Source of the DNA: Zygnema circumcarinatum SAG 698-1b
Taxonomy: Eukaryota; Plantae; Zygnematophyceae
Reading direction: 5' to 3'
Length of the DNA stretch: 64,000 nucleotides
Assembly: GCA_037447605.1 (NCBI GenBank)
Contig: CM074819.1
Span: 1,882,297 to 1,946,296, forward strand
In this document: piece after piece, positions 15,222-60,030 of the stretch
Position numbering within the stretch: position 1 is the stretch's first letter
Layout: each line of letters opens with the position of its first letter
Translations under genes and position numbers: made by a program
Notes under the pieces: model-generated
Seen by the model: the letters and a program-made list of their open reading frames with translations, nothing else
Told to the model about the DNA's origin: nothing
Databases searched by the model: none

Positions 15222-15279
<58 letters not shown>

Positions 15280-32122: not shown

Positions 32123-34602
32123 GTCCCTTTCCGAGTTGCGCGCGGACTGCGCGGGGACGCCCCGTGCAGTCCGTGCCCGCTCACCAGCGGCTTGCGCCTC
32201 CCAATATAAGTTCACGAGCTCTTGGCAATGGGTCAAATTGCCGTCTTTCTCCCACGTGCTATGTTCAACCCAATAGCCCAGCCACTTCAAGAGATATTCG
32301 TGGCGGGAGGTCTGACCCCTGTTCACGGTTCGGTGGGTCTGAATGGACTCGACCTGCGTACTTTCGAGGTCGCCTTCAATATCCTTTGGGGGTGGAGGTG
32401 AAACAGTCTCCGTGCTCAAATGGCGCTTTAAGCGGGGCGCTCATGAAACACGGATGTATCTTCATGTAGGCGGTAAAAAACAACTTAGCGACCGTAATCG
32501 CGGCTCAAGACGAATGGCCGATGAACGTGGCCCACAACTACGGGTTCCCCGTAAGCCTTGATCTGAGTTCGCGGTACCTTTCGGCGGCCGTCGCCCGGTG
32601 GGCATTGAGCTGGAGTCCGTTCTTGATCGACATAGGTCTTCTGTCGGGACTGTGCTGCCAGCAGTGTCTGCCTTGCACGCTGCACAGCTTCGGACATGAG
32701 TCGAACAAAAGATCTAAGGGCGGGTGGGTGATCCCCCCCAGCTCCTCTCAAGCCCCAAGGGTCATCGTCCCGGTGGATGCCTTCATTCCACGAGGACGGT
32801 GGCTGATCCCTTGGCTGCAGGGGATTTAGAGGATGCTGACCATAATTTAGAAAGAAGGGGGTCGTACCGATTGATTCCTGATGAGCATTGTTGATGGCGT
32901 ACTCCGCCAATGGGAGCAAGGTATCCCACTCATCCGGCGTGGGTCCCACGTAATGCCGCAGGAAATCTTCCACAATGCGGTTGACCCTCTCCGTCTGGCC
33001 GTCAGTTTGCGGATGGAAAGCTGTGCTGAGCGCTTGCTTGGTGCCCACGATTTTCAGAATTTCAGTCCAAAAGTGACCGGTAAATCGGGGATCCCTGTCA
33101 GAAACAATGGTGGACTAAACCATCCAAGCTCCACACCTTGTCGACGTAGAGTCGCGCCACCTCTTCCGCCCCAGCGGACTTCTGAGTAGGTGCAAAGTGC
33201 ACCATTTTGCTGAGACGGTCGACAAACACCATAATAGCATCGTGACCCCGTGGGGTTTCTGGTAAATCTGTGATTAGATCCATACCGATGCTCTCCCACT
33301 TACGGAAAGGGGGAGTGAGTGGTTGAAGCTGGCCAGGAATCCTGCCAGTGCGGGGCTTATTACGTTGACAGGTTGGACAGGCCAGCACATATGCCGACAC
33401 ATCCGTCGTGAGTCCCGGCCACCAAAACTCACGGAGTACTGCCTCGGAGGTTTTGGCAACACCCATGTGGCCCCTGTAAGGAGGATCGTGCATCTCACTT
33501 AGAATGAGCTGCCNNNNNNNNNNAGCAGACTCACATGAAACACCGGATGTATCTTCATGTGAGCCGGTAAAGCCAACTTGTAAGCGACTTCGCCAATGCG
33601 GCTCAAGACCTTGAATGGCCCGATGAACCGTGGCCACAACTTACGGGTTCCCCCGTAAGCCTTCAGTCTCAGGTTCGCGGTACTCAGCAGCACGTCCGCC
33701 CCAGGCTGGAACGTGAGCTGAGTCCGTTTGCGATCAGCATAGGTCTTCTGTCGGGACTGTGCTGCCAGCAGTGTCTGCCTTGCACGCTGCACAGCTTCGG
33801 ACATGAGTCGAACAAAAGATCTAAGGGCGGGTGGGTGATCCCCCCCAGCTCCTCTCAAGCCCCAAGGGTCATCGTCCCGGTGGATGCCTTCATTCCACGA
33901 GGACGGTGGCTGATCCCTTGGCTGCAGGGGATTTAGAGGATGCTGACCATAATTTAGAAAGAAGGGGGTCGTACCGATTGATTCCTGATGAGCATTGTTG
34001 ATGGCGTACTCCGCCAATGGGAGCAAGGTATCCCACTCATCCGGCGTGGGTCCCACGTAATGCCGCAGGAAATCTTCCACAATGCGGTTGACCCTCTCCG
34101 TCTGGCCGTCAGTTTGCGGATGGAAAGCTGTGCTGAGCGCTTGCTTGGTGCCCACGATTTTCAGAATTTCAGTCCAAAAGTGACCGGTAAATCGGGGATC
34201 CCTGTCAGAAACAATGGTGGACTAAACCATCCAAGCTCCACACCTTGTCGACGTAGAGTCGCGCCACCTCTTCCGCCCCAGCGGACTTCTGAGTAGGTGC
34301 AAAGTGCACCATTTTGCTGAGACGGTCGACAAACACCATAATAGCATCGTGACCCCGTGGGGTTTCTGGTAAATCTGTGATTAGATCCATACCGATGCTC
34401 TCCCACTTACGGAAAGGGGGAGTGAGTGGTTGAAGCTGGCCAGGAATCCTGCCAGTGCGGGGCTTATTACGTTGACAGGTTGGACAGGCCAGCACATATG
34501 CCGACACATCCGTCGTGAGTCCCGGCCACCAAAACTCACGGAGTACTGCCTCGGAGGTTTTGGCAACACCCATGTGGCCCCTGTAAGGAGGATCGTGCAT
34601 CT
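32123..34602 (-). mobile_element. Ty3/gypsy chromovirus integrase and chromodomain fragments (family A), partly duplicated across gaps
   Basis: HHCC zinc finger (HDPPYRGH...CPTC), rve core ([27 protein letters not shown]), GPY/F (FIGPFKV) and chromodomain (EYLLKWLGYWVEHSTWE). ~32630-33493 and ~33738-34600 are near-identical. Confidence 0.9.
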
Positions 34603-34612
34603 NNNNNNNNNN

Positions 34613-34791
34613 CCAATCAGCGCCGCTCGTTCGTACTCCGCGCACTCGCGGCGCACTCACCTGAGTCAGAGCACCGACATTCCTCAATCTAAGAGCACTA
34701 CGCCTAGCAGATCTCATGTTCTACAAACTGAGTACCACAACAAGTTAGTGTGTGCCATACAATGTCTAACTATCATACACTAACACTAACA
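34613..34791 (-). mobile_element. 5' end of a copia-family LTR (fragment)
   Basis: Ends ...CTATCATACACTAACACTAACA, the same terminus as the copia LTR at 43862 and the reverse complement of 60394. Confidence 0.75.
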
Positions 34792-35896: not shown

Positions 35897-37920
35897 TCGG
35901 TACTTCCCATGTCTCAACCGCAACCACCTTAGCAGGGTGTGGTCGAATGCCCTGATCATTCAGGATATGCCCAAGGTAAAGCAGCTCACGCTGCATGAAG
36001 TGACACTTCTTCCACTTGGCATAAAAATGATGCTTCCTCAGAACTTCAAACACTGTTCTCACGTGTTGAAGATGATCCTCAATTGTCTTACTAAAGATGA
36101 GGATATCATCGAGGTACACCAAAACAAAGTACATCCTGCCTTAATAGCTTTAGCCAACTGCATGGCTGAGCACAGAAAAGGTGTATTAGACTGCTCAGCA
36201 GCATCTGAAGTCGTAATGCCTGGACGTAGAGTTATTCGTCGTGCGCCACAATGCAAAACCCAAGTGGGTATGGAAAAATCCATCTGAGCCTTGACCATGG
36301 TTAACCACTGACTTCCCAGAATAACATCTAGGCTAGGCGCCAGATTAGTGAGAAAACACCGAATCTGCCCTGAGTAAGTCTGAATCTTCAGACGTGTGGT
36401 TATGGTTCCAAGGATTTGACCCTGTCTACCATCACCAAAAGTCACAACTTCGGTAAGAGGGGAGACGGGCAAGTCAACAAGCTTAACAAGTACAGCACTA
36501 ATGAAATTAGCATCAGCACCTGAATCAAGTAAAACTACTACAGATCTGCCGCCAATGAATCCCTAAAAGGTCATTGCACAGTGTGCAAGGTGGAAGAGTG
36601 AACGCAATACATACGATGATGGAGAACATGAAGTCCGCCAGATCAAAGGGTATGGCGATCCAACCAGCAAACTGGTAAAAGTATCCACCCAATGTAGCAT
36701 GGGATGTCCTTTTCGCCAGATCTTCACCAACTTCCAGTTAGTATGGCTAAAAGTCCCAATAGAAGCATGCAAACGCATCAATACATGCAAACTTGAAACA
36801 TGATTTGTGGTGCGCTGTTAACGTAGAGCAACAAATGTGCAATCAATAAGAGACACATGACCTGAAGGATTCAAAATCCAAACAGTCAATTGTTCTCCAT
36901 TCATCACAACATTCATGAAAGAGTCAGGAGTCACGATTAAGGAAATCAAGAATGGAATCACATTTAGATGCTCAGGACACAAAGTCAAAAATACATCATG
37001 GTCATCCGGCTGTCTGCCCATCAAATTCAAAATATCAAGAGGTTGTGGTACAAACAAGCCTCTAGAACTGATGGCAGCAGCTGCAATCCTTAATCTATCT
37101 TCTCCACCCGCAGCGACTCCTACACTGCTGGTGGTGTGCCGTTTTCCGGCCCTTTTCCCTTCTTGTCCTTGATGCTTTGCGGATTGTCCTTCGCCATATG
37201 GCCAGACTGCCGGCATCGAAAGCAACGTCCTTCTTTCTTCATCTTCTCCATTTCCTGTGGAGTAAGCTTCTGCACCTTCGCAGAAGGCTGTGGGGCAGAG
37301 GTTGCACTCGGCTTCCTCTTTTGCGGATTTTCCCCCTTAAGCTTTGGAAATGAAGGGAAGAGCTTCCGGTCTGCCTGGAGGTGGTGGACGTGAAGGCCTG
37401 GCGCCGCCGCCAGGAAAGGAATCAGCTTGCAAAGCCGCCGCATAGAAGAATTCTACATCCACGGGCTCCCACGGTTGAGATGTACGTGGATTTAATCGCA
37501 ATTCCTTCTTCAAATGCGGCTTCAGGCCCATCCAGAAGTGATAAAACACTGCTTCATCAGTAGGACGATGTGTCTTAATGAGTGACACCGTCATACGCAG
37601 ATCTCGCAGGAACTTCTTGGCACTACCAGTTTGTACCATATTGTGGTACCTTTGACGCGCTTCCATTCCAGGATCCAAAAACCCAAAATGACGCTCAAGT
37701 TCTTTGCAAAATTTCTCCCAATCACTCCCAATCTTAGTGGCTAAGCTCTCGTATACACGATAGGCATCGCCGCGGAGTGATGGATATGAGAAATTCACCC
37801 ACTCCTTCTGTGGGCAATTCGTGGCGTGAAGGTAACCCTTCACTTGGCCCAACCACTGTTCGATAGAACAGTCAGTTGTCGGGTGTTCTCCCCAAGGAGA
37901 AATGGGGGTTACCTTGGCCC
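35897..37920 (-). mobile_element. Ty3/gypsy family A copy 1: gag C-terminal half, extra domain, protease and internally deleted RT (pseudogenised)
   Basis: Gag (FSYPSLRGDAYRVY, CFRCRQSGHMAKD), protease LLDSGADANF and RT FVLVYLDDILIFSK, with premature stops. Confidence 0.9.
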
Positions 37921-40900: not shown

Positions 40901-43862
40901 CCTCGAACTCTGAACTTCATTCAATCGGGGGTTCCACACCCTGTAGGTGCGACTGTCAGCGTTATAGCCGAGAATGTACCCTTCTACGGCTCTCGGGTCG
41001 AACTTCCTCTTCTGCTTCGCTTTCGGAACTGTCGACCAACACCGCGCTCCGAATGCCTTCAGGTGAGTGACCGTGGGTTTCCTCCCACTCCACACCTCCT
41101 CAGGAACCTGATCCTTGAGGACAGAGGATGGACATCTGTTCCTAAGGTAAGCGGCAGTCATCACTGCCTCTCCCCAAAAAGATGCCTGAAATGGGGAATC
41201 AATCAGCATGGTCCGCGCCATGTCCCCCAACGTCCTGTTAACTCTCTCAGCAGCTCCATTACTTTGAGGGGAATAGGGAGCAGAGAATTCATGCCTTATG
41301 CCTTGAGACTTGAGATATTCACCAAACTCCTTGGACTTGAACTCGCCTCCGTTATCTGAACGAAGAGTCTTCAACTTGTGTCCAGTCTCTCTCTCCATCT
41401 GAATCTGCCAATCTCTGAAGGCTCCGAATGCCTCAGACTTGTTCTTGAGAATCTTCACCCAGATCTTCCTCGAAAAATCGTCGAGGAAGGTGATGAAATA
41501 ACGGGCTCCTCCTGTTGTTGTCGGTGTCACGGGGCCACAGAGGTCGGTATGGATTAACTCCAACTTCTCCTTCGCATGGAACGCCTCTTCTCCACTCCTC
41601 GAAAACGGTCTCCTACGCGCCTTCCCCTCCACACACTCTTTGCAAAGTCCGAGCTCCTTCTCAACTACGTCAACATCCAACCCACGGACCAGCCCCTTTT
41701 CTGCCAGTTGCTGCAAGCCCCTATGGTTGAGGTGACCAAGTCTACGATGCCAGAGATTCACTGCATCTTCAGCCACGGCCATGACTTCCTCGTCTTCTTC
41801 TCTCCTATAGTGAAGGTAATACAACCCTCCTTTCTCAAACCCCTTAAACAGCTGCTTCCCCGTCACAAGGTGAGTAGCTACACATGACTTCTCCCTGAAC
41901 ATGACCTCATACCCCTTCTTACATACTTGGCTAACAGACATAAAATTCTGTTTCAGCTCAGGGGTGTGAAGGACGTCACCGATGCAGAGGCGCTCTTGCC
42001 TCTTTTCTTCGTAGATCACGGAGCCGTCTCCGAGGATCATCTTGACTTCACCTCCTTTTGCGTGCTGCGCATTTCCTCTCGGCAGCTGATGAACGGGAAC
42101 GTGTCCTCTCCAACGTGTCCAACGTGGAAAACATTTGCTTGTCGCCACACATGTGTGTGGAAGCGCCAGAGTCGATCAGCCATGGCCGCTTCAAATCCTG
42201 AACCTGGATCTTCCCAACAAAGTCAGAATGTTCAGTCACCATGAGGTTGGTCTCCACCGCCACTCTGCAATCTGCACTCTTGTGGCCACGCTTCTTGCAC
42301 TTGAAGCAGGTCCTCCCTTGAACCCCTTCCTCATCCTTCTTGATGATGACGAGCGCCTCCTCTCGACTCGGGTCTCTTGTTTGTAATAGTCCTTTGAAGA
42401 GTGGCCGCTCTTGCCACATGGTAGCAGATTCCGAGGATGCTCTCTCGACTGACTTCACCTGCTTCTTCTGCTCTACGTGCAGTGTGAGCACCTTCTCCAC
42501 CTTCGAACGTCTTGAACTGAGTCCTCCTCCTTGATCCTTCGCTTCACTTGCTCAAGGGTCATTTTCGAATTTGTTAGGACGGTTCTAAGAGCCGCAACTG
42601 CTACATCAAAACGGGCAGGCAGTCCCCCCAGAAACTGGCTAATCTTATGATCACTCTCTAATGGTTTCTGAAGGGCTATGAACCTTTCCATCAGAGTATC
42701 AAACCTGACCATATATTCGCTAAGTTTCTCATCTGAGGACATCTTCATTTTCCCTAGCTGCGTGTAAAGGTTGACAATCGTCACATTATCCTTTACATCA
42801 TACATCTCTTCTAAGCACCTCCACATCGCATGTGAGGTCTTGAGATCATACAGCATAGAGGAGGGACTTCCCCTCACACTCATGACGATCTGGGTAAGGG
42901 CCTTGTTGTCCTTGGCCTTCCATCTGGTGAGCGCCGTGTCGAACTCCGACTGCTGCTCCGCCGTGGCTCCCTCCGGTAGCACTGGTGCCTTGATGGTGCC
43001 GTCAACGTACCCCAACAGCCCCTTGCCCACGAGCAAGGGGACCAGCCGCCACCTCCACCCCTTGTAGTCCGATCCATCGAACGCCGGGATGCTGAACTTC
43101 ACGTGGTCCTCGTCGCCACCATTGGCTCTGATACCACTTGTTGAAGGAGGGAACATCTCGCTGCTTCCGGCTCCACCTCGCGTGTCGCCCTCCACAGGAA
43201 CTCGTGTTCCCACCGATGAAGACATTTCCACTCTTGCACTCTCAAAGCTNNNNNNNNNNCCAAACACACAACACACACTATATACTATATGGCGTTGTGA
43301 CGTGACACACATGTCACGTCACGGCCGCCATAGCTGGCCCTTGCATTCGGCAAAGCGGCGCACTCAGAATAGCGACCTACGGTAGTGGTCTCGTAAACCT
43401 ACGACGACACCGACCTATTTCCGTCCTATCTGTACAGTGCCGCCGTTCGTCGGGTACCCTTAACATTTTCCGGCCGCCGACTCCTTCGCCGTACGCTCGA
43501 ACCAACGGGCCCACTCAGTAAGTGGCCCGCGTGGCTGGCGATTAAATTACGCCCGACATTCCTTAAGTAAACGGCGTCCTTAAATAGCTGGCGCTCCAGC
43601 GTCTTTCAGCGCCCGTGTCCAATCATCACCGGCGCATCCGTGCAGCGCGCCGGCGTCAGTAGCGGCGACAATCCAGCTCCAGCGTCTCAATTCTGTAGCG
43701 ATCAATCCGCGGCCGTTCATCACATCCGCCCCGTAGCGCCACACAGGGAACTTAAGTTGCTGACGTCATCGTGACTCATACTAGGTAGTTTCCATGACTG
43801 AGTACCACAACCAAGTTAGTGTGTACTATGTAATGCTTAACTATCATACACTAACACTAACA
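37926..43862 (-). mobile_element. Full-length but degraded Ty1/copia retrotransposon inserted into gypsy gag
   Basis: 5' LTR 43862-43139, PBS TGGTATCAGAGCC (43136-43124), gag (FDGSDYKGWRW), CCHC, protease WLIDSGAS, HHCC (LWHRRLGH..CKEC), rve (IHTDLCGP, LRSDNGGEF, NGAAERVN), RT (YKARLVAKGFSQ, LDIKTAFL, LYGLKQAP, YVDDL), RNase H GYADSDW, PPT ~38873-38883 and 3' LTR ~38872-37926. TSD TGTTC at 37921-37925 and 43863-43867. Confidence 0.93.
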
Positions 43863-44199: not shown

Positions 44200-47100
44200 T
44201 CCTCTCTGACCCGAATCAGTCAAAGTGTGTACAGCAATACGCGAGCGCTGCCGCATTCCGCGCGCGCAGGCGTGGCGCAGTCCCCATGCATTGGTGCACC
44301 ACGGACCCTGGGCACACGGCCGGGGTCCAATTGTCAGTGCGTTCGGTGCCCAGCGGTAATCCGGTAATGTGCGGGCGGCATGCCGTTCGAGGTCCGGCCC
44401 GGAGTCCGGTGGCGTGGCTGGATTGGTCCCGGTATGCGTATCTAATGTCCCAGTGTGCGGAGGGGGACCTTGGCGGGTGATGTGGGGCGCACCGTGACTA
44501 TATGGTGCCCCCACGTGTGAACCAGTTCTTACGGTTCGAACCTAGGACCTCCGTCGTCCTATAGGGTATCCGATGCCCTAACCATTAGGTAATGCATTGG
44601 ATGGAAACATAAGGCCACGCCGGGCTTTAAGTAATCCTTCCCCCTTGGGGTGACTGTAGCGTTTCGCTACATTACTACCCCCCTGTGAGAATGTGACAGC
44701 GATTCACATGTGTGGGGTAATGAGGGCAGCTCGTAGTTTGGGCGGCACACGTCGAACTCTGCGTGATAGGAAGGCTCAGCAATAATCCCGGTCAGTCAGC
44801 TTTCGAGTTGCGGCGGGGACAGCTCAGGAACCCCAGGGCCGGTCTCGCCCCGCTCTCCTGCGGCCTACGCCTCCTAGTACAAGTTGATGAGCTCCTGGCA
44901 ATTGGTTAAGTTGCCCTCGGCTTCCCATGTGCTATGTTCAACCCCATAGCCCAACCATTTCACGAGGTATTCGTGACGGGAAGAACGACCCTTTCTCACA
45001 ATACGATGGGCTTGAATGGTTTCAACTTCATACTCAAGTTCACCTTCAAGTTCCANNNNNNNNNNCTTACGTGTTCCGCCATAAGCTTTGAGTCTCAAGT
45101 TCGCCGTACTTAGCAACACTTCATCGCCCTCATTGAAAGTGAGTTGGGTACGGTGACGGTCAACATAGGCCTTTCGTCGCGACTGGGCCGCTAGCAGGGT
45201 CTGCCGTGCCCTCTGCAGCGCCTTAGACATTAGCCGGACAAAAGATCTGACTGCGGGAGGTTGGGTCCCATCAGTCCCTCTCTACTTCCAAGGGTCGGGG
45301 GTTCTGTGGACGCCCATGTTCCACGGATCAGGGGGCTGATCCCTTGGTTGCAGGGGATTTAGAGGATGCTGGCCAAAGTTCAAGAAGAAAGGGGTGGTAC
45401 CAATGGACTCCTGGTAAGCATTATTGATGGCATACTCACGCAAAAGGCAGCGTCCGCCCATCCGGGTAGGTCCCACGTAATGCCAGAGGTAATCCTCCAG
45501 GATACCTGTTCCACCCAACCCCAGTACCGCCATCAACTGCAGGGTGGAAAGATATACTGGGGGCCAGCTGAGCCCCACAATTTTGACACTTCAATCCAGA
45601 GATGGCCAATAAATCGTGGATCGCAGTCCAACACAATTTTGGCTGAAGACCATATGGCTCCACACTTTGTCGACATACAAGCCGTGGGCTGATAGACCCA
45701 GGCAAACTTAGTAGTTGGTGCAAAATGCACCGTCTTGCATGAGCCGATCAACAAAGACGAGGATGGAGTCATGCCCCCAAAATATAGCGGAAGCTGTGAT
45801 CAAGTCCATACCCACACTATCCTGTTGCGGAAAGGAGTGTGAGGGGTAGGCTCCACGGGGACACTGCAGGTGCGGGTTTGCTCGTGACAAGTTGGACAAA
45901 CGAGTACATGCCGCTTCACGTCCTCTCGGAGTCCAAGCCACCAGAACTCACGAGCGGTGCTCAGCGGGTGGCGCTTCCCATGTGAGTCTCGATGCGGAGG
46001 ATCATGTAAGCTCACTCAGATCAGGAACTTCCGTGCGGTCCGGCCTAAGACACAACCAACTCCTCACATAGTACCCAAAATCCATCCTTGAGCACCACTT
46101 TGTCCTTATAGCCATTACCTTGGCCATCCAGGAACAAAGGATCACCAGTATACCCCTCCTGAATCATCCGTTTGAGATCAGAGAGAGCAGGAGGGTCGAC
46201 TGCGTCACTGGTGGAGGGATCTATGACAAAGCATGCTGGAGACGGAAACTCGGGGTTGGCCAGCCCCTCACCTCCGTCCCACCAACACTCGGGGGTGGCG
46301 GGCGCACCATGCGGGGCAGGGGATGCCGAGGTGTGTGAGTGGGTTTGCTACATTCGAGCCTTGTGGGCCGATCGCCCGTTGGCAGTCGAACCTCGGAGGG
46401 ACTTCGATTAGCGTGCCTGCCGCCTAGACAGGGTCTGTTGGGTTGAGAGGAACGTCAGCGGGCGGTGGTCAGTGACCAGCGTGACCGCTTTCGCCCCCTC
46501 CAAATAGCACCGCCATGTCCTCAGGGCGTGGACTACTGCAAGCAGTTCCTGTTCTGTTGCAGAATAGTTGCGCTCAGCGGGATTCATTTTGCGACTTTCA
46601 TACGCCAAAGGTTGGCCATCTTGAAACAAGACGGCACCCAAGGCGAATCCCGAAGCATCACAAACCACTTCATAAGGTTTGGACGGGTCCGCTAAACGGA
46701 GAGTGGGTGCGGTAACAAGTGCATGGCGTACGCCCTCAAATGCTTCCTGACATTCAGGGGTCCATGCAAAGGGGACACCGGAACGTGTCAAATTAGTCAA
46801 GGGAGTAACCANNNNNNNNNNACAAGATGGGCGCCCCAAAGGGGCTCTGACTGGGTTCTATCCAGCCTTTGTCCCGTAAATTAGTCAACTGCTTACGCAT
46901 CTCTTCGGTTTCTTTTGGGCTTAACCGATAAATCGGCCGCCAAGGCGGCTTTTGCTCAGGCTCTAGAGGGACTGTGTGCCCCACTCCTCTAGATGGTGGC
47001 AACCCTCTTGGAAGGTCGTCAGGGAAGACATCCCTGAATTCATCCAACAAAGGTTGGAATTTGGGTGGAACGGCCGAGAGCACATCCGTAGATGTGATCT

Positions 47101-48690
47101 GCCACTCCTGATCTTCGTCATGCACATCCTCAGTGGCTGCCATGACACGCACCATGAACAAGGTGCAACCCTCCTTAACTGCTTTGGCCAGTTGCATGGC
47201 CGAACAGAGATAAGGGTCATCCAACTGTTTGGAAACAGTGGATGTGGATCTGCCAGGGTGCAAGGTTATGCGCCTGTCACCACTGTGCAGAACGCAATGG
47301 GGGATGGAGAAATCGAGTTGGGCCTTGACCATGGTTAACCAAGCACTCCCCAAAATCACATCAGTTCCAGGGGCCAGCTGTGTCAAAAGACACTTCACTC
47401 CCCCGGAGTAGGATTGGAGCTTGATCTTGAGGGTGACGCTTCCAGAGATCTGGCCCTTGCGTCCATCCCCGAAAGTAACACTTTCGGTATGGGGATCTAT
47501 GGTCAATTCCAACCTCTGGGTGAATGCAAAACTAACGAAGTTAGCATCTACCCCAGTATCTAGCAGTATAACTGCTGGGTGGCCATTGGCTAACCCGGTG
47601 AAAGTCATTGCACGATGGGCAAGATGGAACATGGAGCGCACTAAATGCGAGGGGTGAGGACGAGCCGTCCTCCACACCAAGGTGTAGGGTGATCCGACCA
47701 GCAAACTGGCGGATCCTTCCATCATTTGCACTAACTTGTGCCCTTTCCTCAATTGTTTCACCAACCGCCAAGTGGCGTTGGGAAAGGTGCGAGCTGCCAT
47801 GTGTTGAGGAACCAGCACATGCAGCCCAAGGACATGGGAGGTGTTTCCCATGACATGCAAAGAATCTATGGCACATTGCATGAGAACATCATCGCCCATG
47901 ACATTGAGGATAAAGACATGCCAATCACCATTCATCACTACATCCATAAACCTAGAAGGAGTCACTACAGTGGCAGGGAAGAGAGAAATGGACGCAGGGA
48001 GTGCATCACACGCAAAGAGGTCGTGCATTCCCAAAGGTCTGCCCATCAATTTAAGAATGTCCAAGGTTCTAAGAAACAAATGTCCCCTAGCCCTGGCGGC
48101 AGCTTCCATCCTTTCCCCTAACCTAGCATGTCCACCAGCAACGACCCCTAAGCTGCTGGTGGGTTGGGGTTTTCCGGCCCCTTGCCCTTCTTGTCCTTGG
48201 CGTTAAGAGGGCAATCCCGGGCCTTATGCCCCTCTTTCCTGCATCGGAAGCACTTGTTCTCCCGCTGCATCCGCTCCATCTCTTCCGGAGTCAACTTCTG
48301 CGGCCGTGCAGGGGCTGGGCGGGCAGTCGTTTGCGGCTGTTTCCGCTTGTTCTTTCCTGCCGGTTTGGCAGGAGCAGAGGGTCCCGCCTTCCATGACCCT
48401 GTCACATCTCCCGACCTCTGCTGGGGTCGGGAAGGGCCTGCATCGCCTGCAGGGGCGGTGTCCAGCTGAATGGCTGCATCAAAGTACAGCTCGGAGTCAG
48501 CGGGGTCCCACNNNNNNNNNNTGGTGCCCCCACGTGTGAACCAGTTCTTACGGTTCGAACCTAGGACCTCCGTCGTCCTATAGGGTATCCGATGCCCTAA
48601 CCATTAGGTAATGCATTGGATGGAAACATAAGGCCACGCCGGGCTTCAAGTAATCCTTCCCCCTTGGGGTGAATGTAGCGTTTCGCTACA
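44200..48690 (-). mobile_element. Ty3/gypsy chromovirus family B copy 1 (gapped): LTR start, gag end, extra domain, PR, RT start, RNase H, integrase, chromodomain, PPT, 3' LTR
   Basis: LTR starts TGTAGCGAAACGCTACA at 48690 and 44671. PPT 44685-44672. CCHC (CFRCRKEGHKARDC), LLDTGVDANF, VCDASGFALGAVL, NYSATEQELLAVV and chromodomain EYLVKWLGYGVEHSTWE. The left boundary is uncertain because of poor sequence. Confidence 0.85.
44528..44595 (-). promoter_or_regulatory. tRNA-like Pol III type-2 promoter module in gypsy B LTR (also at 48547-48614 and 50621-50688)
   Basis: Minus strand TACCTAATGGTTAGGGCATCGG...GGAGGTCCTAGGTTCGAACC: D-arm/A-box-like hairpin and a canonical B-box GGTTCGAACC. Confidence 0.6.
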
Positions 48691-52496: not shown

Positions 52497-52540
52497 GGAA
52501 AACCCCAACCCACCAGCAGCTTAGGGGTCGCTGCTGGTGG
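52497..52540 (+). promoter_or_regulatory. Putative -1 programmed ribosomal frameshift signal (gag-pol)
   Basis: G_GAA_AAC heptamer (52497-52503), 6-nt spacer and 11-bp stem CCACCAGCAGC/GCTGCTGGTGG. Also at 48175-48132, 37147-37104 and 59821-59778 on the minus strand. Confidence 0.7.
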
Positions 52541-55500
52541 ACATGCTAGGTTAGGGGAAGGGATGGAGACTGTTGCCAAGACTAGGGGACAATTGTTTCT
52601 TAGAACCTTGGACATTCTTAAATTGATTGGCAGACCTTTGGGAATGCACGATCTCTTTGTGTGTGATGCACCCCCTGTTTCCATTTCCCTCTCCCCTGCC
52701 ACTATAGTGACTCCTTCTGGGTTTATGGATGTAGTGATGAATGGTGATTGGCATGTCTTTATCCTCAATGTCATGGGCGATGATGTTCTCATGCAATGTG
52801 CCATGGATGCTTTGCATGTCATGGAAACACCTCCCCATGTCCTTGAAACATGTACTGGTTCCTCAGCACATGGCAATTCGCACCTTTCCCAACGCCACTT
52901 GGCGGTTGGTGAAACAGTTGAGGAAAGGGCACAAATTGGTGCAGACGATGGAAGGATCCACCAGTTCGCTGGTTGGGTCACCCTACACCTTGGTGTGGAG
53001 GACGACTCGTCCTCAACCCTCGCATATAGTGGGATCCATGTTCCATCTTGCCCATCGTGCCATGACTTTCCGGGGGTCAGCCAATGGCAACCCAGCAGTT
53101 ATATTGCTAGATACTGGGGCAGATGCTAACTTTGTTAGTTCTGCATTCACCCAAAGATTTGGGTTGACCACAGATCCCCATTCAGAAAGTGTTACTTTCG
53201 GGGATGGACGCCAGGGCCGGATCTCTGGCATCGTCACACTCAAGATCAAGCTCTAATCCTACTCCGAGGCAGTGAAGTGTCTTCTGTCACAACTGGCCTC
53301 TGGTACGGATGTTATTTTAGGGAGTACTTGGTTAACCATGGTCAAAGCCCAATTGGACTTTTCCATCCCACACTGTATTCTGCACAGTGGGGATAGGCGC
53401 ATCACACTGCACCCTGGCAAACCCACATCCACTGCAATCACGCAGGTTGATACTCCTTATCTCTGCTCGGCCATGCAATTGGCCAAAGCTGTTAAGGAGG
53501 GTTGCACCTTGTTCATAATGCATGTCATGGCAGCCACTGAGGATGTGCATGACGAAGATCAGGAATGGCATATCACATCTATGGATGTGCTCTTGGCCGT
53601 TCCACCCAAATTCCAACCTTTGTTGGATGAATTCAGAGATGTCTTCCCTGACGACCTCCCGAGAGGGTTGCCACCATCTCGAGGAGTGGGGCACACAATC
53701 CCTCTTGAGCCTGAGCAAAAGCCGCCTTGGCGGCCGATTTATCGGTTAAGCCCAAAAGAAACCGAAGAGATGCGTAAGCAGTTGACTAATTTACGGGACA
53801 AAGGCCGGATAGAACCCAGTCAGAGCCCCTTTGGGGCGCCCATCTTGTTTGTTGGGAAAAACGATGGCTCGTTGAGAATGTGCATTGATTATCGCGCACT
53901 CAACAAGATCACCGTAAAGAATCGATTTGCTTTACCACGTATTGATGATCTGTTAGATCGTCTTCACGGCGCCAAAGTGTTTACTTCACTTGACCTTGCT
54001 CAGGGGTATCATCAGATCCGCGTAACGGAAGCTGATGTGCCAAAAACTGCGTTCCGGACGCCGATTGGTCATTTCCAGTATAAGGTGTTGCCCTTTGGAT
54101 TGACTAATGCTCCGGCGACTTTCCAGGTTGTAATGAACGAGATGTTCATCGGCATGGACGCGTTTGTTTTGGTTTACCTCGATGACATCCTTGTCTTTAG
54201 TAAGACAGAGGGGGAACATCTTGAACACGTTCGGAAAGTGTTTGAGGTACTGAGGACGAACCGGTTTTATGCCAAGAGAAAGAAGTGTCACTTCATGCAA
54301 CGTGAGTTGCTCTATCTTGGGCATATTCTCAATGATCAGAGCCTTCGGCCAGATCCTGCCAAGGTTTCTGCGGTAGAAACTTGGGCGCCACCGACTGACT
54401 TACATTAGTTGCGGTCATTCTTAGGATTTGCGAATTATTTTCGTAAATTCATCCAAGGGTTTAGTAAGCTGGTTACTCCCTTGACCAATTTGACACGTTC
54501 CGGTGTCCCCTTTGCATGGACCCCTTAATGTCAGGACGCATTCGAGGGCGTGCGCCATGCACTTCTTACCGCACCCACTCTCCGTTAAGCGGACCCGTCC
54601 AAACCTTATGAAGTGGTTTGTGATTCTTTGGGATTTGCCTTGGGTGCCGTCTTGTTTCAAGATGGCCAACCTTTGGCGTATGAAAGTCGCAAAATGAATC
54701 CCGCTGAGCGCAACTATTCTGCAACAGAACAGGAACTGCTTGCAGTAGTCCACGCCCTGAGGACATGGCGGTGCTATTTGGAGGGGGCGAAAGCGGTCAC
54801 GCTGGTCACTGACCACCGCCCGCTGACGTTCCTCTCAACCCAACAGACCTTGTCTAGGCGGCAGGCACGGTGGTCTNNNNNNNNNNGTTGGATGAATTCA
54901 GAGATGTCTTCCCTGACGACCTCCCGAGAGGGTTGCCACCATCTCGAGGAGTGGGGCACACAATCCCTCTTGAGCCTGAGCAAAAGCCGCCTTGGCGGCC
55001 GATTTATCGGTTAAGCCCAAAAGAAACCGAAGAGATGCGTAAGCAGTTGACTAATTTACGGGACAAAGGCCGGATAGAACCCAGTCAGAGCCCCTTTGGG
55101 GCGCCCATCTTGTTTGTTGGGAAAAACGATGGCTCGTTGAGAATGTGCATTGATTATCGCGCACTCAACAAGATCACCGTAAAGAATCGATTTGCTTTAC
55201 CACGTATTGATGATCTGTTAGATCGTCTTCACGGCGCCAAAGTGTTTACTTCACTTGACCTTGCTCAGGGGTATCATCAGATCCGCGTAACGGAAGCTGA
55301 TGTGCCAAAAACTGCGTTCCGGACGCCGATTGGTCATTTCCAGTATAAGGTGTTGCCCTTTGGATTGACTAATGCTCCGGCGACTTTCCAGGTTGTAATG
55401 AACGAGATGTTCATCGGCATGGACGCGTTTGTTTTGGTTTACCTCGATGACATCCTTGTCTTTAGTAAGACAGAGGGGGAACATCTTGAACACGTTCGGA

Positions 55501-56386
55501 AAGTGTTTGAGGTACTGAGGACGAACCGGTTTTATGCCAAGAGAAAGAAGTGTCACTTCATGCAACGTGAGTTGCTCTATCTTGGGCATATTCTCAATGA
55601 TCAGAGCCTTCGGCCAGATCCTGCCAAGGTTTCTGCGGTAGAAACTTGGGCGCCACCGACTGACTTACATTAGTTGCGGTCATTCTTAGGATTTGCGAAT
55701 TATTTTCGTAAATTCATCCAAGGGTTTAGTAAGCTGGTTACTCCCTTGACCAATTTGACACGTTCCGGTGTCCCCTTTGCATGGACCCCTTAATGTCAGG
55801 ACGCATTCGAGGGCGTGCGCCATGCACTTCTTACCGCACCCACTCTCCGTTAAGCGGACCCGTCCAAACCTTATGAAGTGGTTTGTGATTCTTTGGGATT
55901 TGCCTTGGGTGCCGTCTTGTTTCAAGATGGCCAACCTTTGGCGTATGAAAGTCGCAAAATGAATCCCGCTGAGCGCAACTATTCTGCAACAGAACAGGAA
56001 CTGCTTGCAGTAGTCCACGCCCTGAGGACATGGCGGTGCTATTTGGAGGGGGGCGAAAGCGGTCACGCTGGTCACTGACCACCGCCCGCTGACGTTCCTC
56101 TCAACCCAACAGACCTTGTCTAGGCGGCGAGCACGGTTAGTGCGAGGATTCCTCCAAAGATTTGGTACCCGAGTGGGTCTCGGCGGAAGAAATTTGAATG
56201 CTTAGCAAACCGCGGCGGGCAGCCTCGGCATCTTGCTGGATGTTGGCTTCGTCATTTCGGTGTTGGTGGAGCGAGGATGAGCCAGGAGTGGTACAGCCAG
56301 CCCCGGTTTCCGTCTCCAGCGTAGCTTTGTCATAGATCCTCCACACCCGGTGGCCAGCGGTCGACCTCGCTCTCGATCTCAAACGG

Positions 56387-58024
56387 ATGATTCAGGAGGG
56401 GTATACTGGTGATCCTTTGTTCCTGGATGGCCAAGGTAATGGCTATAAGGACAAAGTGGTGTCTAAGGACGGATTTTGGTACCACGGCCAGCAGTTGGTC
56501 GTGCCCAAGACCGGGACTGTACGGCAGCTCATTCTGAGTGAGTTACATGATCCTCCGTACCGAGGTCACATGGGAGTTGCCAAAACCCGTGAGGCACTGC
56601 TCCGAGAGTTCTGGTGGCCTGGACTCTCGAGGGACGTGAAAGCGTATGTACTCGCTTGTCCAACTTGTCAACGAAACAAACCCCGCACTGGCAGGATCCC
56701 TGGCCAGCTGCAACCCCTCACACCTCCTTTTCGGAAATGGGACAGTGTGGGTATGGACTTGATCACAGATCTTCCTGTGACACCTCGGGGGCATGACTCC
56801 ATCCTCGTCTTTGTCGATCGGCTCAGCAAGATGGTGCATTTTGCACCAACTACTAAGACCGCTGGGGCCGACGAGATTGCACGGTTGTATGTTGACAAAG
56901 TGTGGAGCCAGCATGGTCTTCAGTCAGAAATTGTGTCTGACCGTGATCCACGATTCACCGGCCATTTTTGGACGGAAGTGCTCAAAATCGTGGGGACCAA
57001 GCCGGCCCTGAGTACAGCTTTCCACCCGCAAACCGATGGCCAGACGGAACGGGTGAACAGGATCCTGGAGGATTACCTCCGGCATTATGTGGGACCTACC
57101 CCGGATGGGTGGGATGAACTGCTCCCAGTGGCTGAGTATGCCATCAATAATGCTTACCAGGAGTCCATTGGTACCACCCCTTTCTTCTTGAACTTTGGCC
57201 AGCATCCTCTAAATCCCCTGCAACCAAGGGATCAGCCCCCTGATCCGTGGAACATGGGCGTCCACAGAACGCCCGACCCTTGGAAGCTGAGAGGGACTGA
57301 TGGGACTCAACCTCCGGCGGTCAGATCTTTTGTCTGGCTAATGTCTAAGGCGCTGCAGAGGGCACGGCAGACCCTGCTAGCGGCCCAGTCGCGACAAAAG
57401 GCCTATGCTGATCGTCACCGTACCCAACTCACTTTCAATGAGGGCGACGAAGTGTTGTTAAGTACGGCGAACTTGAGACTCAAGGCTTATGGCGAAACAC
57501 GTAAGTTGTGGCCCCGCTTCATCGGACCCTTCAAGGTCGTGAAGCGCATCAATGAGGTCGCTTACCGGTTAGATTTACCATCTCACATGAAGGTGCATCC
57601 GGTCTTTCATGTGGGCTTGCTAAAGGTCTACCGTAGCGATGGGAGGATCCAGCCACCTCCCCCACCAGTGGAACTTGAAGGTGAACTTGAGTATGAAGTT
57701 GAAACCATTCAAGCCCACCGTATTGTGAGAAAGGGTCGTTCTTCCCGTCACGAATACCTCGTGAAATGGTTGGGTTATGGGGTTGAACATAGCACATGGG
57801 AAGTCGAGGGCAACTTAACCAATTGCCAAGAGCTCATCAATTTGTACTGGGAGGCGCAGGCCGCAGGAGAGCGGGCGAGGGCGGCTCGGGGGATTCCTGA
57901 GCCGTCCCCGCGCAACTCGGAAAGGGACTTGACCGGGATTATCGCTGAGCCCTCCCGGTTATCACGTAGAGTTCGACGCGTGCCGTTGAAACTACGAGCT
58001 GCCTTTACTACCCCACACACGTGA
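56387..58024 (+). CDS. Gypsy integrase-chromodomain portion of pol (intact 545-aa frame)
   Basis: HHCC, DDE core, FIGPFKV, HPVFHV and chromodomain YEVETIQAHR...EYLVKWLGYGVEHSTWE. Confidence 0.88.
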   Translation: MIQEGYTGDPLFLDGQGNGYKDKVVSKDGFWYHGQQLVVPKTGTVRQLILSELHDPPYRGHMGVAKTREALLREFWWPGLSRDVKAYVLACPTCQRNKPRTGRIPGQLQPLTPPFRKWDSVGMDLITDLPVTPRGHDSILVFVDRLSKMVHFAPTTKTAGADEIARLYVDKVWSQHGLQSEIVSDRDPRFTGHFWTEVLKIVGTKPALSTAFHPQTDGQTERVNRILEDYLRHYVGPTPDGWDELLPVAEYAINNAYQESIGTTPFFLNFGQHPLNPLQPRDQPPDPWNMGVHRTPDPWKLRGTDGTQPPAVRSFVWLMSKALQRARQTLLAAQSRQKAYADRHRTQLTFNEGDEVLLSTANLRLKAYGETRKLWPRFIGPFKVVKRINEVAYRLDLPSHMKVHPVFHVGLLKVYRSDGRIQPPPPPVELEGELEYEVETIQAHRIVRKGRSSRHEYLVKWLGYGVEHSTWEVEGNLTNCQELINLYWEAQAAGERARAARGIPEPSPRNSERDLTGIIAEPSRLSRRVRRVPLKLRAAFTTPHT

Positions 58025-58175: not shown

Positions 58176-60030
58176 CGCCCCCTCCAAATAGCACCGCCAT
58201 GTCCTCAAGGCGTGGATTACTGCAAGGAGCTCCTGCTTAGTTGCAGAATAGTTACGTTTGGCTGGGTTCATCTTACGACTTTCGTACGCAAGAGGTCGAC
58301 CATCCTAAAACAGAACGGCTCCTAGAGCAAATCCGGACGCATCACAAACCACCTCATATGGTTTGGTAGGGTCTGCCAACACCAATGTAGGTGCAGTGAC
58401 TAAGGCATGTTTGACACCCTCGAAGGCCCTTTGGTATTCAGGCGTCCAAATGTAGTTGACACCGGCACGTGTCAAATATGTCAAGGGAGTAACAAGTTTG
58501 CTAAACCCTTGAATAAATTTACGAAAATAATTCGCAAATCCGAGGAAAGACCGCAACTGATGTAAATCAGTCGGTACTTCCCATGTCTCAACCGCAACCA
58601 CCTTAGCAGGGTCCGGTCATATGCCCTGAGCATTCAGGATATGCCCAAGGTAAAGCAGCTCACTCTGCATGAACTGACACTTCCTCCACTTGGCATAAAA
58701 ATGATGCTTCCTCAGAACTTCAAACACTGTTCTCACGTGTTGAAGATGATCCTCAATTGTCTTACTAAAGATGAGGATATCATCGAGGTACACCAAAACA
58801 AAGTACATCCTGCCTTAACAGCTTTAGCCAACTGCATGGCTGAGCACAGAAAAGGTGTATCAGACTGCTCAGCAGCATCTAAAGTCGTAATGCTTGGGCG
58901 TAGAGTTATTCGTCGTGCGCCACAACGCAAAACACAAGTGGGTATGGAAAAATCCATCTGAGCCTTGACCATGGTTAACCACTGACTTCCCAGAATAACA
59001 TCTAGGCCAGGCACCAGATTAGTGACAAATCACCGAATCTGCCCTGAGTAAGTCTGAATCTTCAGACGTGTGGTTATGGTTCCAAGGATTTGACCCTGTC
59101 TACCATCACCAAAAGTCACAACTTCGGTAAGAGGGGAGACAGGCAAGTCAACAAGCTTAACAAGTACAGCACTAATGAAATTAGCATCAGCACCTGAATC
59201 AAGTAAAACTACTACAGATCTGCCGCCAATGAATCCTTGAAAGGTCATCGCACAGTGTGCAAGGTGGAAGAGTGAACGCAATACATACGATGATGGAGAA
59301 CATGAAGTCCGCCAGATCGAAGGGTATAGCGATCCAACTAGCAAACTGGTAGAAGTATCCACCCAATGTAGCATGGGATGTCCTTTTCGCCAGATCTTGA
59401 CCAACTTCTAGTTAGTATGGCTAAAAGTCCCAATAGAAGCATGCAAAGGCATCAATACATGCAAACTTGAAACATGAGTAGTGGTGCGCTGTAAACGTAA
59501 AGCAATAAATGTGCAATCAATAAGAGACACATTACCTGAAGGATTCAAAATCCAAACAGTCAATTGTTCTCCATTCATCACAACATTCATGAAAGAGTCA
59601 GGAGCCACGATTAAGGAAATCGAGAATGGAATCACATTCAGATGCTCAGGACACAACGTCACAAATACATCATGGTCATCCGGCTGTCTGCCCATCACAT
59701 TCAAAATATCAAGAGGTTGTGGTACAAACAAGCCTCTAGAACTGATGGCAGCAGCTGCAATCCTTAATCTATCTTCTCCACCCGCAGCGACTCCTACACT
59801 GCTGGTGGTGTGCCGTTTTCCGGCCCTTTTCCCTTCTTGTCCTTGATGCTTTGCGGACAGTCCTTCGCCATATGGCCAGACTGCCGGCATCGGAAGCAAC
59901 GTCCTTCCTTCTTCATCTTCTCCATTTCCTGTGGAGTAAGCTTCTGCACCTTCGCAGAAGGCTGTGGGGCAGAGGTTGCACTCGGCTTCCTCTTCTGCGA
60001 ATTCGCCCCCTTAAGCTTCGGAAATGAAGG
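58176..60030 (-). mobile_element. Ty3/gypsy family A copy 2: gag end, extra domain, PR, deleted RT, RNase H (pseudogenised)
   Basis: [48 protein letters not shown] and VCDASGFALGAVL. Same RT deletion as copy 1. Confidence 0.9.

What the first reader, a model, noticed from the sequence alone, without database searches (positions are those of the whole stretch)
47610..48110. Conserved ~170-aa extra domain between Gag and protease, resembling a degenerate Dam-type N6-adenine methyltransferase
Seen: in family B copy 1 the Pol frame is open for ~170 aa before the protease (LMGRPLGMHDLFAC...SRFMDVVMNGDWHVFILNVMG...LHVLVP...WRLVKQLRKGHKLV...GSPYTLVWRT). The divergent family A keeps the same block (LMGRQPDDHDVF...SFMNVVMNGEQLTVWILNPSG...LHVLMP...WKLVKIWRKGHPML...GSPYPLIWRT; 37100-36575, 59775-59250; B copy 2 at 52545-53060). 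Known: ordinary Ty3/gypsy Pol begins with the protease, and DIRS retroelements carry a phage-Dam-like methyltransferase domain with DLFA, a hydrophobic strand plus (N/F)PP, and an ILxxP strand. Inference: the order DLFA/DVF, SF, hydrophobic strand-LNP, hydrophobic strand-P matches that fold. The catalytic NPP(Y/F) is eroded to LNPSG/LNVMG, suggesting an inactive MTase-fold nucleic-acid-binding domain kept under selection in a chromodomain-bearing retrotransposon.
Basis: partly seen in the sequence, partly recalled or inferred. Interest (0 to 1): 0.8.

Follow-up and report, generated by a model that had tools for sequence, protein, structure and literature searches.

The report
Extra Pol domain, possible dead methyltransferase
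Two families of a very abundant algal jumping gene (a chromovirus) encode an extra, selected protein domain of about 165 residues just before their protease; it may be a worn-out DNA adenine methyltransferase, but no statistical test here could confirm that.

Summary
All four Ty3/gypsy (chromovirus) copies in the window carry a homologous block of about 165 aa. It lies at the start of Pol, after a -1 frameshift from Gag and directly before a Pfam-recognised protease. Only copy B1 (47612-48109, minus strand) is intact. Families A and B are 43-47% identical in the block, against about 60% in the protease. dN/dS between them is about 0.2, and codon position 2 is more conserved than position 3, so the block is coding and under purifying selection.

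The methyltransferase reading is not established.
- Pfam, PHROGs, NCBIfam, a phmmer scan of 1.84 billion proteins, a custom phage-Dam HMM and HHalign all gave nothing above shuffled controls.
- The AlphaFold model is poor (pLDDT 52). A control shows why: the element's real protease also failed with the same shallow alignment.

Some weak evidence points the same way.
- Both models predict the same alternating alpha/beta pattern.
- Protein-language-model neighbours of B1 are PCIF1, N6-adenine and Dam families (0.78-0.84).
- One Smith-Waterman alignment is colinear with Dam motifs.
- A 2026 preprint describes Dam-carrying chromoviruses in green algae.

I put a dead Dam-derived domain at about 0.45 and an unrelated lineage-specific domain at about 0.40. 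This scan has noted the same domain before on other DNA of this genome.

The parts
47612..48109 (-). Family B copy 1: the extra Pol N-terminal domain (166 aa), the only intact copy in the window
   Evidence: It is residues 1-166 of the open 438-aa ORF 46793..48109. tblastn self-hit. No Pfam family at E<=10.
47894..47911 (-).
   Evidence: It lies at the C-terminal end of a strand predicted in both AlphaFold runs (E63-68 and E63-69).
48166..48172 (-). Candidate -1 slippery heptamer A AAC CCC in the Gag frame, 15 nt upstream of the Gag stop
   Evidence: Read directly. The Pol frame is -1 relative to Gag. Function is inferred, not tested.
48148..48150 (-). Gag stop codon (TAG) of copy B1
48110..48165 (-). 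Transframe stretch of Pol between the slip site and the domain (PQPTSSLGVVAGGHARLGER)
   Evidence: AlphaFold confidence is low at this N-terminal end of the modelled region.
47252..47611 (-). Protease of copy B1 (catalytic DTG at 47552-47560), directly downstream of the extra domain
   Evidence: Pfam RVP_2 at 2.3e-06, Asp_protease_2 and gag-asp_proteas at residues 171-268. Coordinates.
52563..53058 (+). Family B copy 2 of the domain, broken by a frameshift near 52848
36581..37099 (-). Family A copy 1 of the domain, with an in-frame stop at 36818-36820 and another at 36563-36565 just before the protease
59255..59773 (-). Family A copy 2 of the domain, with an in-frame stop at 59408-59410
56387..58024 (+). 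Integrase plus chromodomain ORF of copy B2, which shows the element is a chromovirus
   Evidence: Pfam Integrase_H2C2, rve, SH3_Tf2-1, and Chromo at 5.7e-16.

Best explanation
The block is a real protein domain of about 150-165 residues. It is translated only as the first part of Gag-Pol, after a -1 ribosomal frameshift near the end of gag, and it sits immediately before the retropepsin.

It most likely folds as an alternating alpha/beta (Rossmann-like) domain. On balance it is a catalytically dead remnant of the Dam-type adenine methyltransferase domain that DIRS elements and some green-algal chromoviruses carry.

The NPP(Y/F) catalytic motif is gone in both families, so it should not methylate. 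Because it is kept under purifying selection in a very high-copy, recently active element, it must serve another purpose. The roles I infer are binding nucleic acid (or a host chromatin factor) inside the particle or pre-integration complex, or acting as a pro-region that controls when the adjacent protease is released.

Shown: the domain's existence, position, frame, selection and missing motif. Inferred: its fold, its Dam ancestry and its role.
For: Domain, position and frame.

Selection: A versus B dN/dS is 0.20, close to the protease's 0.13-0.15, and codon position 2 is more conserved than position 3.

Abundance and recent activity: thousands of Logan contigs from four DNA runs lie on the stretch, several hundred of them at 99% identity or better.

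Fold:
- Two independent AlphaFold runs give the same order of secondary-structure elements: helix, strand 29-34, helix 51-60, strand 63-69, helix 74-87, strand 93-101, helices 102-123, strand 142-148. The domain-only model has pTM 0.55.

Family:
- The ESM feature neighbours of B1 are PCIF1_WW, N6-adenineMlase and Dam clusters (0.78-0.84).
- The best HMM local hit places LHVLVPQHMAARTF on the Dam 'vvmllpadtstkwf' strand at a colinear position.
- The best Smith-Waterman alignment of family A to a T1-like Dam covers VWILNPSG/IWLNPPYS, LHVLMP..TF/IDILLP..WF and IWRKGH/IWITGE in order over 73 residues, with z 3.4.

Precedent: bioRxiv 10.64898/2026.05.21.726589 reports Dam domains in Chlorophyta chromovirus-like elements.
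Against: No statistical support for Dam or any methyltransferase homology:
- Pfam, PHROGs and NCBIfam found nothing at E<=10.
- The custom Dam HMM score was within the shuffle range.
- HHalign, local and global, did no better than column shuffles.
- Pairwise z-scores of B1 against 18 Dams were no higher than against controls (p 0.82). Family A was only marginal (p 0.027), the targets were not independent, and non-colinear alignments reached similar z.

The ESM score is below the 0.9 level, and a truncated family A query gave no hit.

AlphaFold predicts a helix where Dam has strand beta6 (residues 109-123).

All profile tests used phage Dams. Eukaryotic retrotransposon Dam sequences could not be obtained here.
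Confidence: 0.45

Rival explanations
1. A lineage-specific Pol N-terminal domain that does not descend from a methyltransferase. It would be either newly evolved or captured from an unrecognised source. It would work as a transframe pro-region of the protease (like p6* of HIV-1 or the junction region of Ty3), or as an adaptor for a host factor. The Dam-like motifs would be coincidence.
For: No relatives at all: phmmer against 1.84 billion representatives gave only two spurious hits to repeat proteins; the word search found none; metagenome and viral scans found none. Every profile and structure test for methyltransferase homology fell within its null range. A rival motif match that looked equally convincing by eye, to the protease, was also picked up by HHalign and was equally non-significant. 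That shows how easily such matches arise.
Against: The ESM neighbours fall exactly in the N6-adenine methyltransferase class. Whole-domain structure matches are dominated by class I methyltransferases. Dam domains are already known in green-algal chromoviruses.
Confidence: 0.4
2. A degenerate tandem duplicate of the retropepsin, with the catalytic Asp replaced by Asn. It would pair with the active protease as a pepsin-like pseudo-dimer.
For: By eye, NGDWHVFILNVMGDDVLMQ resembles NGHPAVILLDTGVDANFVS, and LLVGSPYTLVW resembles VILGSAWLTMV, with similar spacing. BLASTP and HHalign choose these same stretches as their best local alignments.
Against: Both alignments are non-significant (E 22; HHalign P 0.27). 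There is no Pfam protease hit on the block, whereas the true protease is hit. In both AlphaFold runs the block is alternating alpha/beta with long helices, while the true protease in the same run is mostly beta. No retropepsin appears in any structure search.
Confidence: 0.07
3. A non-functional spacer, or sequence conserved only at the nucleic-acid level (for example a packaging or frameshift signal).
For: Three of the four copies in the window are broken. No known family matches.
Against: dN/dS is about 0.2 between families. Codon position 2 is much more conserved than position 3 (0.71 against 0.42). The selection level is similar to that on the protease. The breaks are private to old copies.
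Confidence: 0.03

Closest known systems
[quoted passage not shown]
   Same: They are green-lineage Ty3/gypsy elements with a chromodomain and an extra domain of about 150 aa in the polyprotein. The eukaryotic DAM domain is described there as a five-stranded sheet with an N-terminal helix and C-terminal helices, which is compatible with the element order predicted here.
   Different: Those domains are detectable as Dam and keep Asn-Pro-Pro almost invariably. This one matches no Dam profile and has NVM or NPS instead. The preprint reports no DAM-LTRs in Streptophyta, whereas other notes of this scan (not checked by me) call this genome a streptophyte alga. The position of DAM within those polyproteins is not given in the text I could read.
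Phage T1-type Dam, Pfam PF05869 (also the MT domain of DIRS1-like elements)
   Same: There is a colinear by-eye correspondence of helix (W.TP / PQP), DxAA/DLFA, hydrophobic strand plus N, LLP/LVP strand, and GRxxF/KGHKL, with spacing within 2-4 residues.
   Different: T1 Dam scores 236 bits against PF05869; this domain scores nothing. The catalytic NPPY is absent. There is no significant HMM or HHalign signal.
Pre-protease Pol/Pro regions of retroelements (HIV-1 p6* transframe region, Ty3 junction region, betaretroviral dUTPase in the pro frame); comparison from my own knowledge
   Same: Each is translated only after a frameshift and lies directly N-terminal to the protease.
   Different: p6* and the Ty3 junction are short and largely unstructured. 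dUTPase is an all-beta trimer with five conserved motifs, none of which is present here.

Membership tests
Dam-type N6-adenine methyltransferase (Pfam PF05869 / eukaryotic retrotransposon DAM) | Significant match to the family profile (Pfam gathering score 28.1 bits) | tested here: not met
   No hit at E<=10. The custom HMM of 18 diverse phage Dams gave -1.7 bits, and 108 of 1000 shuffles scored as high. HHalign probability was below 1%. A profile of eukaryotic retrotransposon DAMs could not be tested.
Dam-type N6-adenine methyltransferase (Pfam PF05869 / eukaryotic retrotransposon DAM) | Catalytic motif IV, (N/D)PP(Y/F/W), after a hydrophobic strand | tested here: not met
   B has FILNVMG and A has WILNPSG. 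Only the Asn (plus one Pro in A) remains at the end of predicted strand 63-69.
Dam-type N6-adenine methyltransferase (Pfam PF05869 / eukaryotic retrotransposon DAM) | Class I (Rossmann-like) methyltransferase fold | tested here: inconclusive
Dam-type N6-adenine methyltransferase (Pfam PF05869 / eukaryotic retrotransposon DAM) | S-adenosylmethionine binding and adenine methylation activity | not testable with these tools
   This needs biochemistry. The preprint's own intact eukaryotic DAMs showed no activity in E. coli.
Dam-type N6-adenine methyltransferase (Pfam PF05869 / eukaryotic retrotransposon DAM) | Encoded within a retrotransposon polyprotein of a lineage known to carry DAM (green-lineage chromoviruses) | tested here: met
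   Chromovirus architecture is confirmed. Context alone does not show homology.
Retropepsin (Pfam RVP / RVP_2) | D(T/S)G catalytic triad, profile match and mostly-beta fold | tested here: not met
   The sequence has NVM or NPS in place of DTG. There is no Pfam hit on the block. HHalign against the element's own protease gave P 0.27. The predicted fold is alpha/beta.
Ty3/gypsy chromovirus (the host element) | Gag with CCHC, protease, RT, integrase and a C-terminal chromodomain | tested here: met
   Retrotrans_gag, zf-CCHC, RVP_2, RVT_1, Integrase_H2C2, rve, SH3_Tf2-1 and Chromo were all found.

The most novel reading that the evidence does not exclude
The block is a protein domain with no detectable relative among 1.84 billion protein clusters. 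It would have arisen within chromoviruses of streptophyte algae as a new first module of Pol, unrelated to methyltransferases, and would be kept under selection as a regulator of protease release or an adaptor to host chromatin.
Probability: 0.4. Interest if true: 0.5.

Novelty: new variant of a known kind. Interest (0 to 1): 0.45.

Why it matters
Suppose the Dam ancestry holds. The element would then show that adenine-methyltransferase-carrying chromoviruses also reached, or predate, the land-plant lineage. A Pfam-based survey reported none there. It would also show that the domain was kept after losing its catalytic motif. That points to a non-catalytic use of the fold and bears on why retrotransposons carry such domains at all.

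Suppose instead the ancestry does not hold. The element still offers a selected, high-copy and experimentally tractable new Pol domain next to the protease.

In either case the domain is invisible to standard domain annotation, so surveys of retrotransposon 'epigenetic toolkits' will miss it.

Tried and rejected
- Word-index protein search of the domain: no hit.
- Full phmmer scan of 1.84 billion proteins: two hits, both to repeat proteins (SpaA_4 and others), judged spurious.
- PDB profile search: WD40 hits that arise only from summing weak repeats, so spurious.
- NCBIfam UreE at 16.7 bits against a cut-off of 199: spurious.
- tblastn against phages: noise only.
- Two metagenome scans and one viral scan for relatives: nothing.
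- Attempts to widen the Dam profile returned only T1-like Dams. I then fetched 14 diverse phage Dams one by one.
- Dam HMM against all six frames of the window: no intact Dam anywhere.
- ESM search with a truncated family A piece: no usable hit.
- Exact look-up of the integrase ORF, hoping to find other copies and the organism: not on record.
- My own idea of a duplicated dead protease: rejected.
- Complex prediction was not used, because the report claims no binding pair.

Broken copies were compared piece by piece.

Full report
**What is there**

The window holds four copies of two related Ty3/gypsy families. B1 is on the minus strand around 46.8-48.7 kb. B2 is on the plus strand at 51.6-58.0 kb. 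A1 is on the minus strand around 33-38 kb, and A2 on the minus strand around 58.9-60 kb.

Pfam confirms a chromovirus layout:
- Retrotrans_gag and a CCHC knuckle in Gag.
- RVP_2, Asp_protease_2 and gag-asp_proteas.
- RVT_1.
- Integrase_H2C2, rve and SH3_Tf2-1.
- A C-terminal Chromo domain.

In B1 the ORF 46793..48109 (minus strand, 438 aa) is open. Its protease match begins at residue 171-174 and LLDTG is at residue 182.

The Pol frame is -1 relative to Gag. Gag ends ...GKGPENPNPPAA-stop. A heptamer A AAC CCC (48166-48172, minus strand) lies 15 nt upstream of the Gag stop and fits the X XXY YYZ rule. The block is therefore made only as the first part of Gag-Pol.

**Checking the observation**

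All quoted peptides are present. The family A quotation mixes A1 and A2.

B1 is the only intact copy. B2 has a frameshift near 52848. A1 has stops at 36818-36820 and 36563-36565. A2 has a stop at 59408-59410.

Families A and B share 43-47% identity in the block, against about 60% in the protease.

**Selection**

Nei-Gojobori dN/dS between A and B is 0.20 for the block (bootstrap 0.10-0.47) and 0.13-0.15 for the protease. dS is saturated, so the ratios are rough. The direction is still clear, because identity by codon position is 0.54, 0.71 and 0.42.

Within-family comparisons give ratios of about 0.5 with wide intervals, as expected for copies that are decaying after insertion.

Logan contigs of four DNA runs place thousands of pieces on the stretch, several hundred of them at 99% identity or better. 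The family is very abundant and was active recently. The 'spacer' reading is rejected.

**Sequence tests of the methyltransferase reading**

All came back empty:
- Pfam at E<=10, PHROGs and NCBIfam found nothing relevant.
- The word-index search found none.
- The phmmer scan of 1.84 billion representatives found only two repeat proteins.
- PDB sequence searches found only artefacts.

I then built my own Dam profile. I took phage T1 Dam, which scores 236 bits against PF05869, and added 14 diverse phage Dams fetched one by one.
- hmmsearch with all filters off gave -1.7 bits for B1, and 108 of 1000 shuffles scored as high.
- HHalign gave probabilities below 1%. Its local and global scores were matched by 55 and 63 of 200 column shuffles.
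- Pairwise Smith-Waterman z-scores against 18 Dams were no higher than against 30 control proteins for B1 (p 0.82). They were only marginally higher for family A (p 0.027, with non-independent targets).

**Why I do not call it refuted**

The tests were weak. Only two families exist, so the profile is shallow (Neff 1.5). Only phage Dams were available, and the preprint says eukaryotic DAMs align with only part of the prokaryotic enzyme.

Several weak signals agree with each other:
1. The ESM feature neighbours of B1 are PCIF1_WW, N6-adenineMlase and Dam clusters at 0.78-0.84. Such scores are common for random sequences. Landing in the one enzyme class proposed in advance is not.
2. The HMM's best local hit puts LHVLVPQHMAARTF on the Dam strand 'vvmllpadtstkwf' at a colinear position.
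3. The best alignment of family A to a T1-like Dam runs for 73 residues through VWILNPSG/IWLNPPYS, LHVLMP..TF/IDILLP..WF and IWRKGH/IWITGE (z 3.4). Non-colinear alignments reached similar z, however.
4. Family A keeps Asn-Pro of the catalytic motif, and B keeps only Asn.

**Structure**

AlphaFold2 on the block, using the four copies as the alignment, gave pLDDT 52 and pTM 0.55.

A second run on block plus protease gave pLDDT 34. Even the genuine protease came out at about 30. Low confidence therefore reflects the shallow alignment, not an unusual fold.

Both runs agree on the order of elements in the block: N-terminal helix, strand 29-34 (HDLFAC), helix 51-60, strand 63-69 (HVFILNV), helix 74-87, strand 93-101 (VLGLHVLVP), helices 102-123, strand 142-148 (TLVWRTA). 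In the same run the real protease is mostly beta.

Structure searches found nothing significant:
- Foldseek against PDB and BFVD gave E>0.04.
- Atlas TM-scores were 0.37-0.48.

The matches that span the whole block (100-130 aligned residues) are nearly all class I methyltransferases: M.MpeI 5.3, HhaI 4.8, Hen1 4.5-4.8, PCIF1 4.0 and T4 Dam 4.0. These make up about half of the top 50 rows. SepF, IF3-C and antizyme match only the C-terminal 80 residues.

This favours a methyltransferase-like alpha/beta topology. It counts against my own alternative, a duplicated dead protease, whose by-eye motif match was also non-significant.

**What is already known**

A preprint of May 2026 (bioRxiv 10.64898/2026.05.21.726589) reports Dam domains in LTR retrotransposons. 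These include a Chlorophyta DAM-chromovirus-like clade. Asn-Pro-Pro is almost always kept, no activity was seen in E. coli, and no such elements were found in Streptophyta.

Other notes of this scan call this genome a freshwater streptophyte alga. I did not verify that.

The same domain was noted many times elsewhere in this genome. One earlier follow-up (s1-319547) reached the same 'dead Dam' reading. That is not independent evidence.

**Verdict**

The domain is real, selected, and invisible to standard annotation.
- A catalytically dead Dam-derived fold is the single most likely reading (about 0.45).
- An unrelated lineage-specific Pol domain is nearly as likely (about 0.40).
- A dead protease duplicate (about 0.07) and a spacer (about 0.03) are unlikely.

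The role is inferred only. The candidates are non-catalytic nucleic-acid or host-factor binding, or control of protease release.

Broken copies were compared in pieces.

Noticed in passing
window 48148-48172 (minus strand); equivalent in B2 near 52497-52540: The Gag-Pol junction has the heptamer A AAC CCC 15 nt before the Gag stop TAG, which fits a -1 slippery site. Another first-reader note describes a hairpin with the stop codon in its loop.
   Followed up: partly
window 32485-34717 (minus strand): The integrase part of copy A1 appears twice in tandem with a period of about 1.1 kb. The ORFs 32485..33048 and 33499..34155 are identical for their first ~140 residues and then diverge, and 33098..33637 and 34205..34717 share the same ~130-residue C-terminal part. 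10-N gaps lie at 33514 and 34603. This looks like an assembly artefact or a recent tandem duplication.
   Followed up: no
window 53272-55673 (plus strand): The reverse-transcriptase segment of copy B2 is repeated. ORFs 53272..54408 and 54870..55673 share the same roughly 260 residues, next to a 10-N gap at 54877. This is probably a scaffolding artefact.
   Followed up: no
window 39582-43312 (minus strand) and 61238-61897 (plus strand): There is a Ty1/copia-type element (Gag, integrase, RT), with a second partial Gag copy that is nearly identical in protein sequence.
   Followed up: no
window 12919-15447 (minus strand): Exon-like pieces of a P-type ATPase ([26 protein letters not shown]...) are interrupted by long CT/GA-rich low-complexity tracts. 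These tracts translate as LSLSPS or GEGRG repeats in several frames.
   Followed up: no
window 46822-48511: At about 40 listed sites, nearly all contigs of four public runs carry a different base from copy B1. B1 therefore has many private substitutions relative to the bulk of its family.
   Followed up: partly
method note (model mcb073410f620): With only the four window copies as the alignment, AlphaFold2 failed (pLDDT about 30) even on the Pfam-confirmed protease. This is a useful warning for any fold-based claim about elements of this genome.
   Followed up: yes
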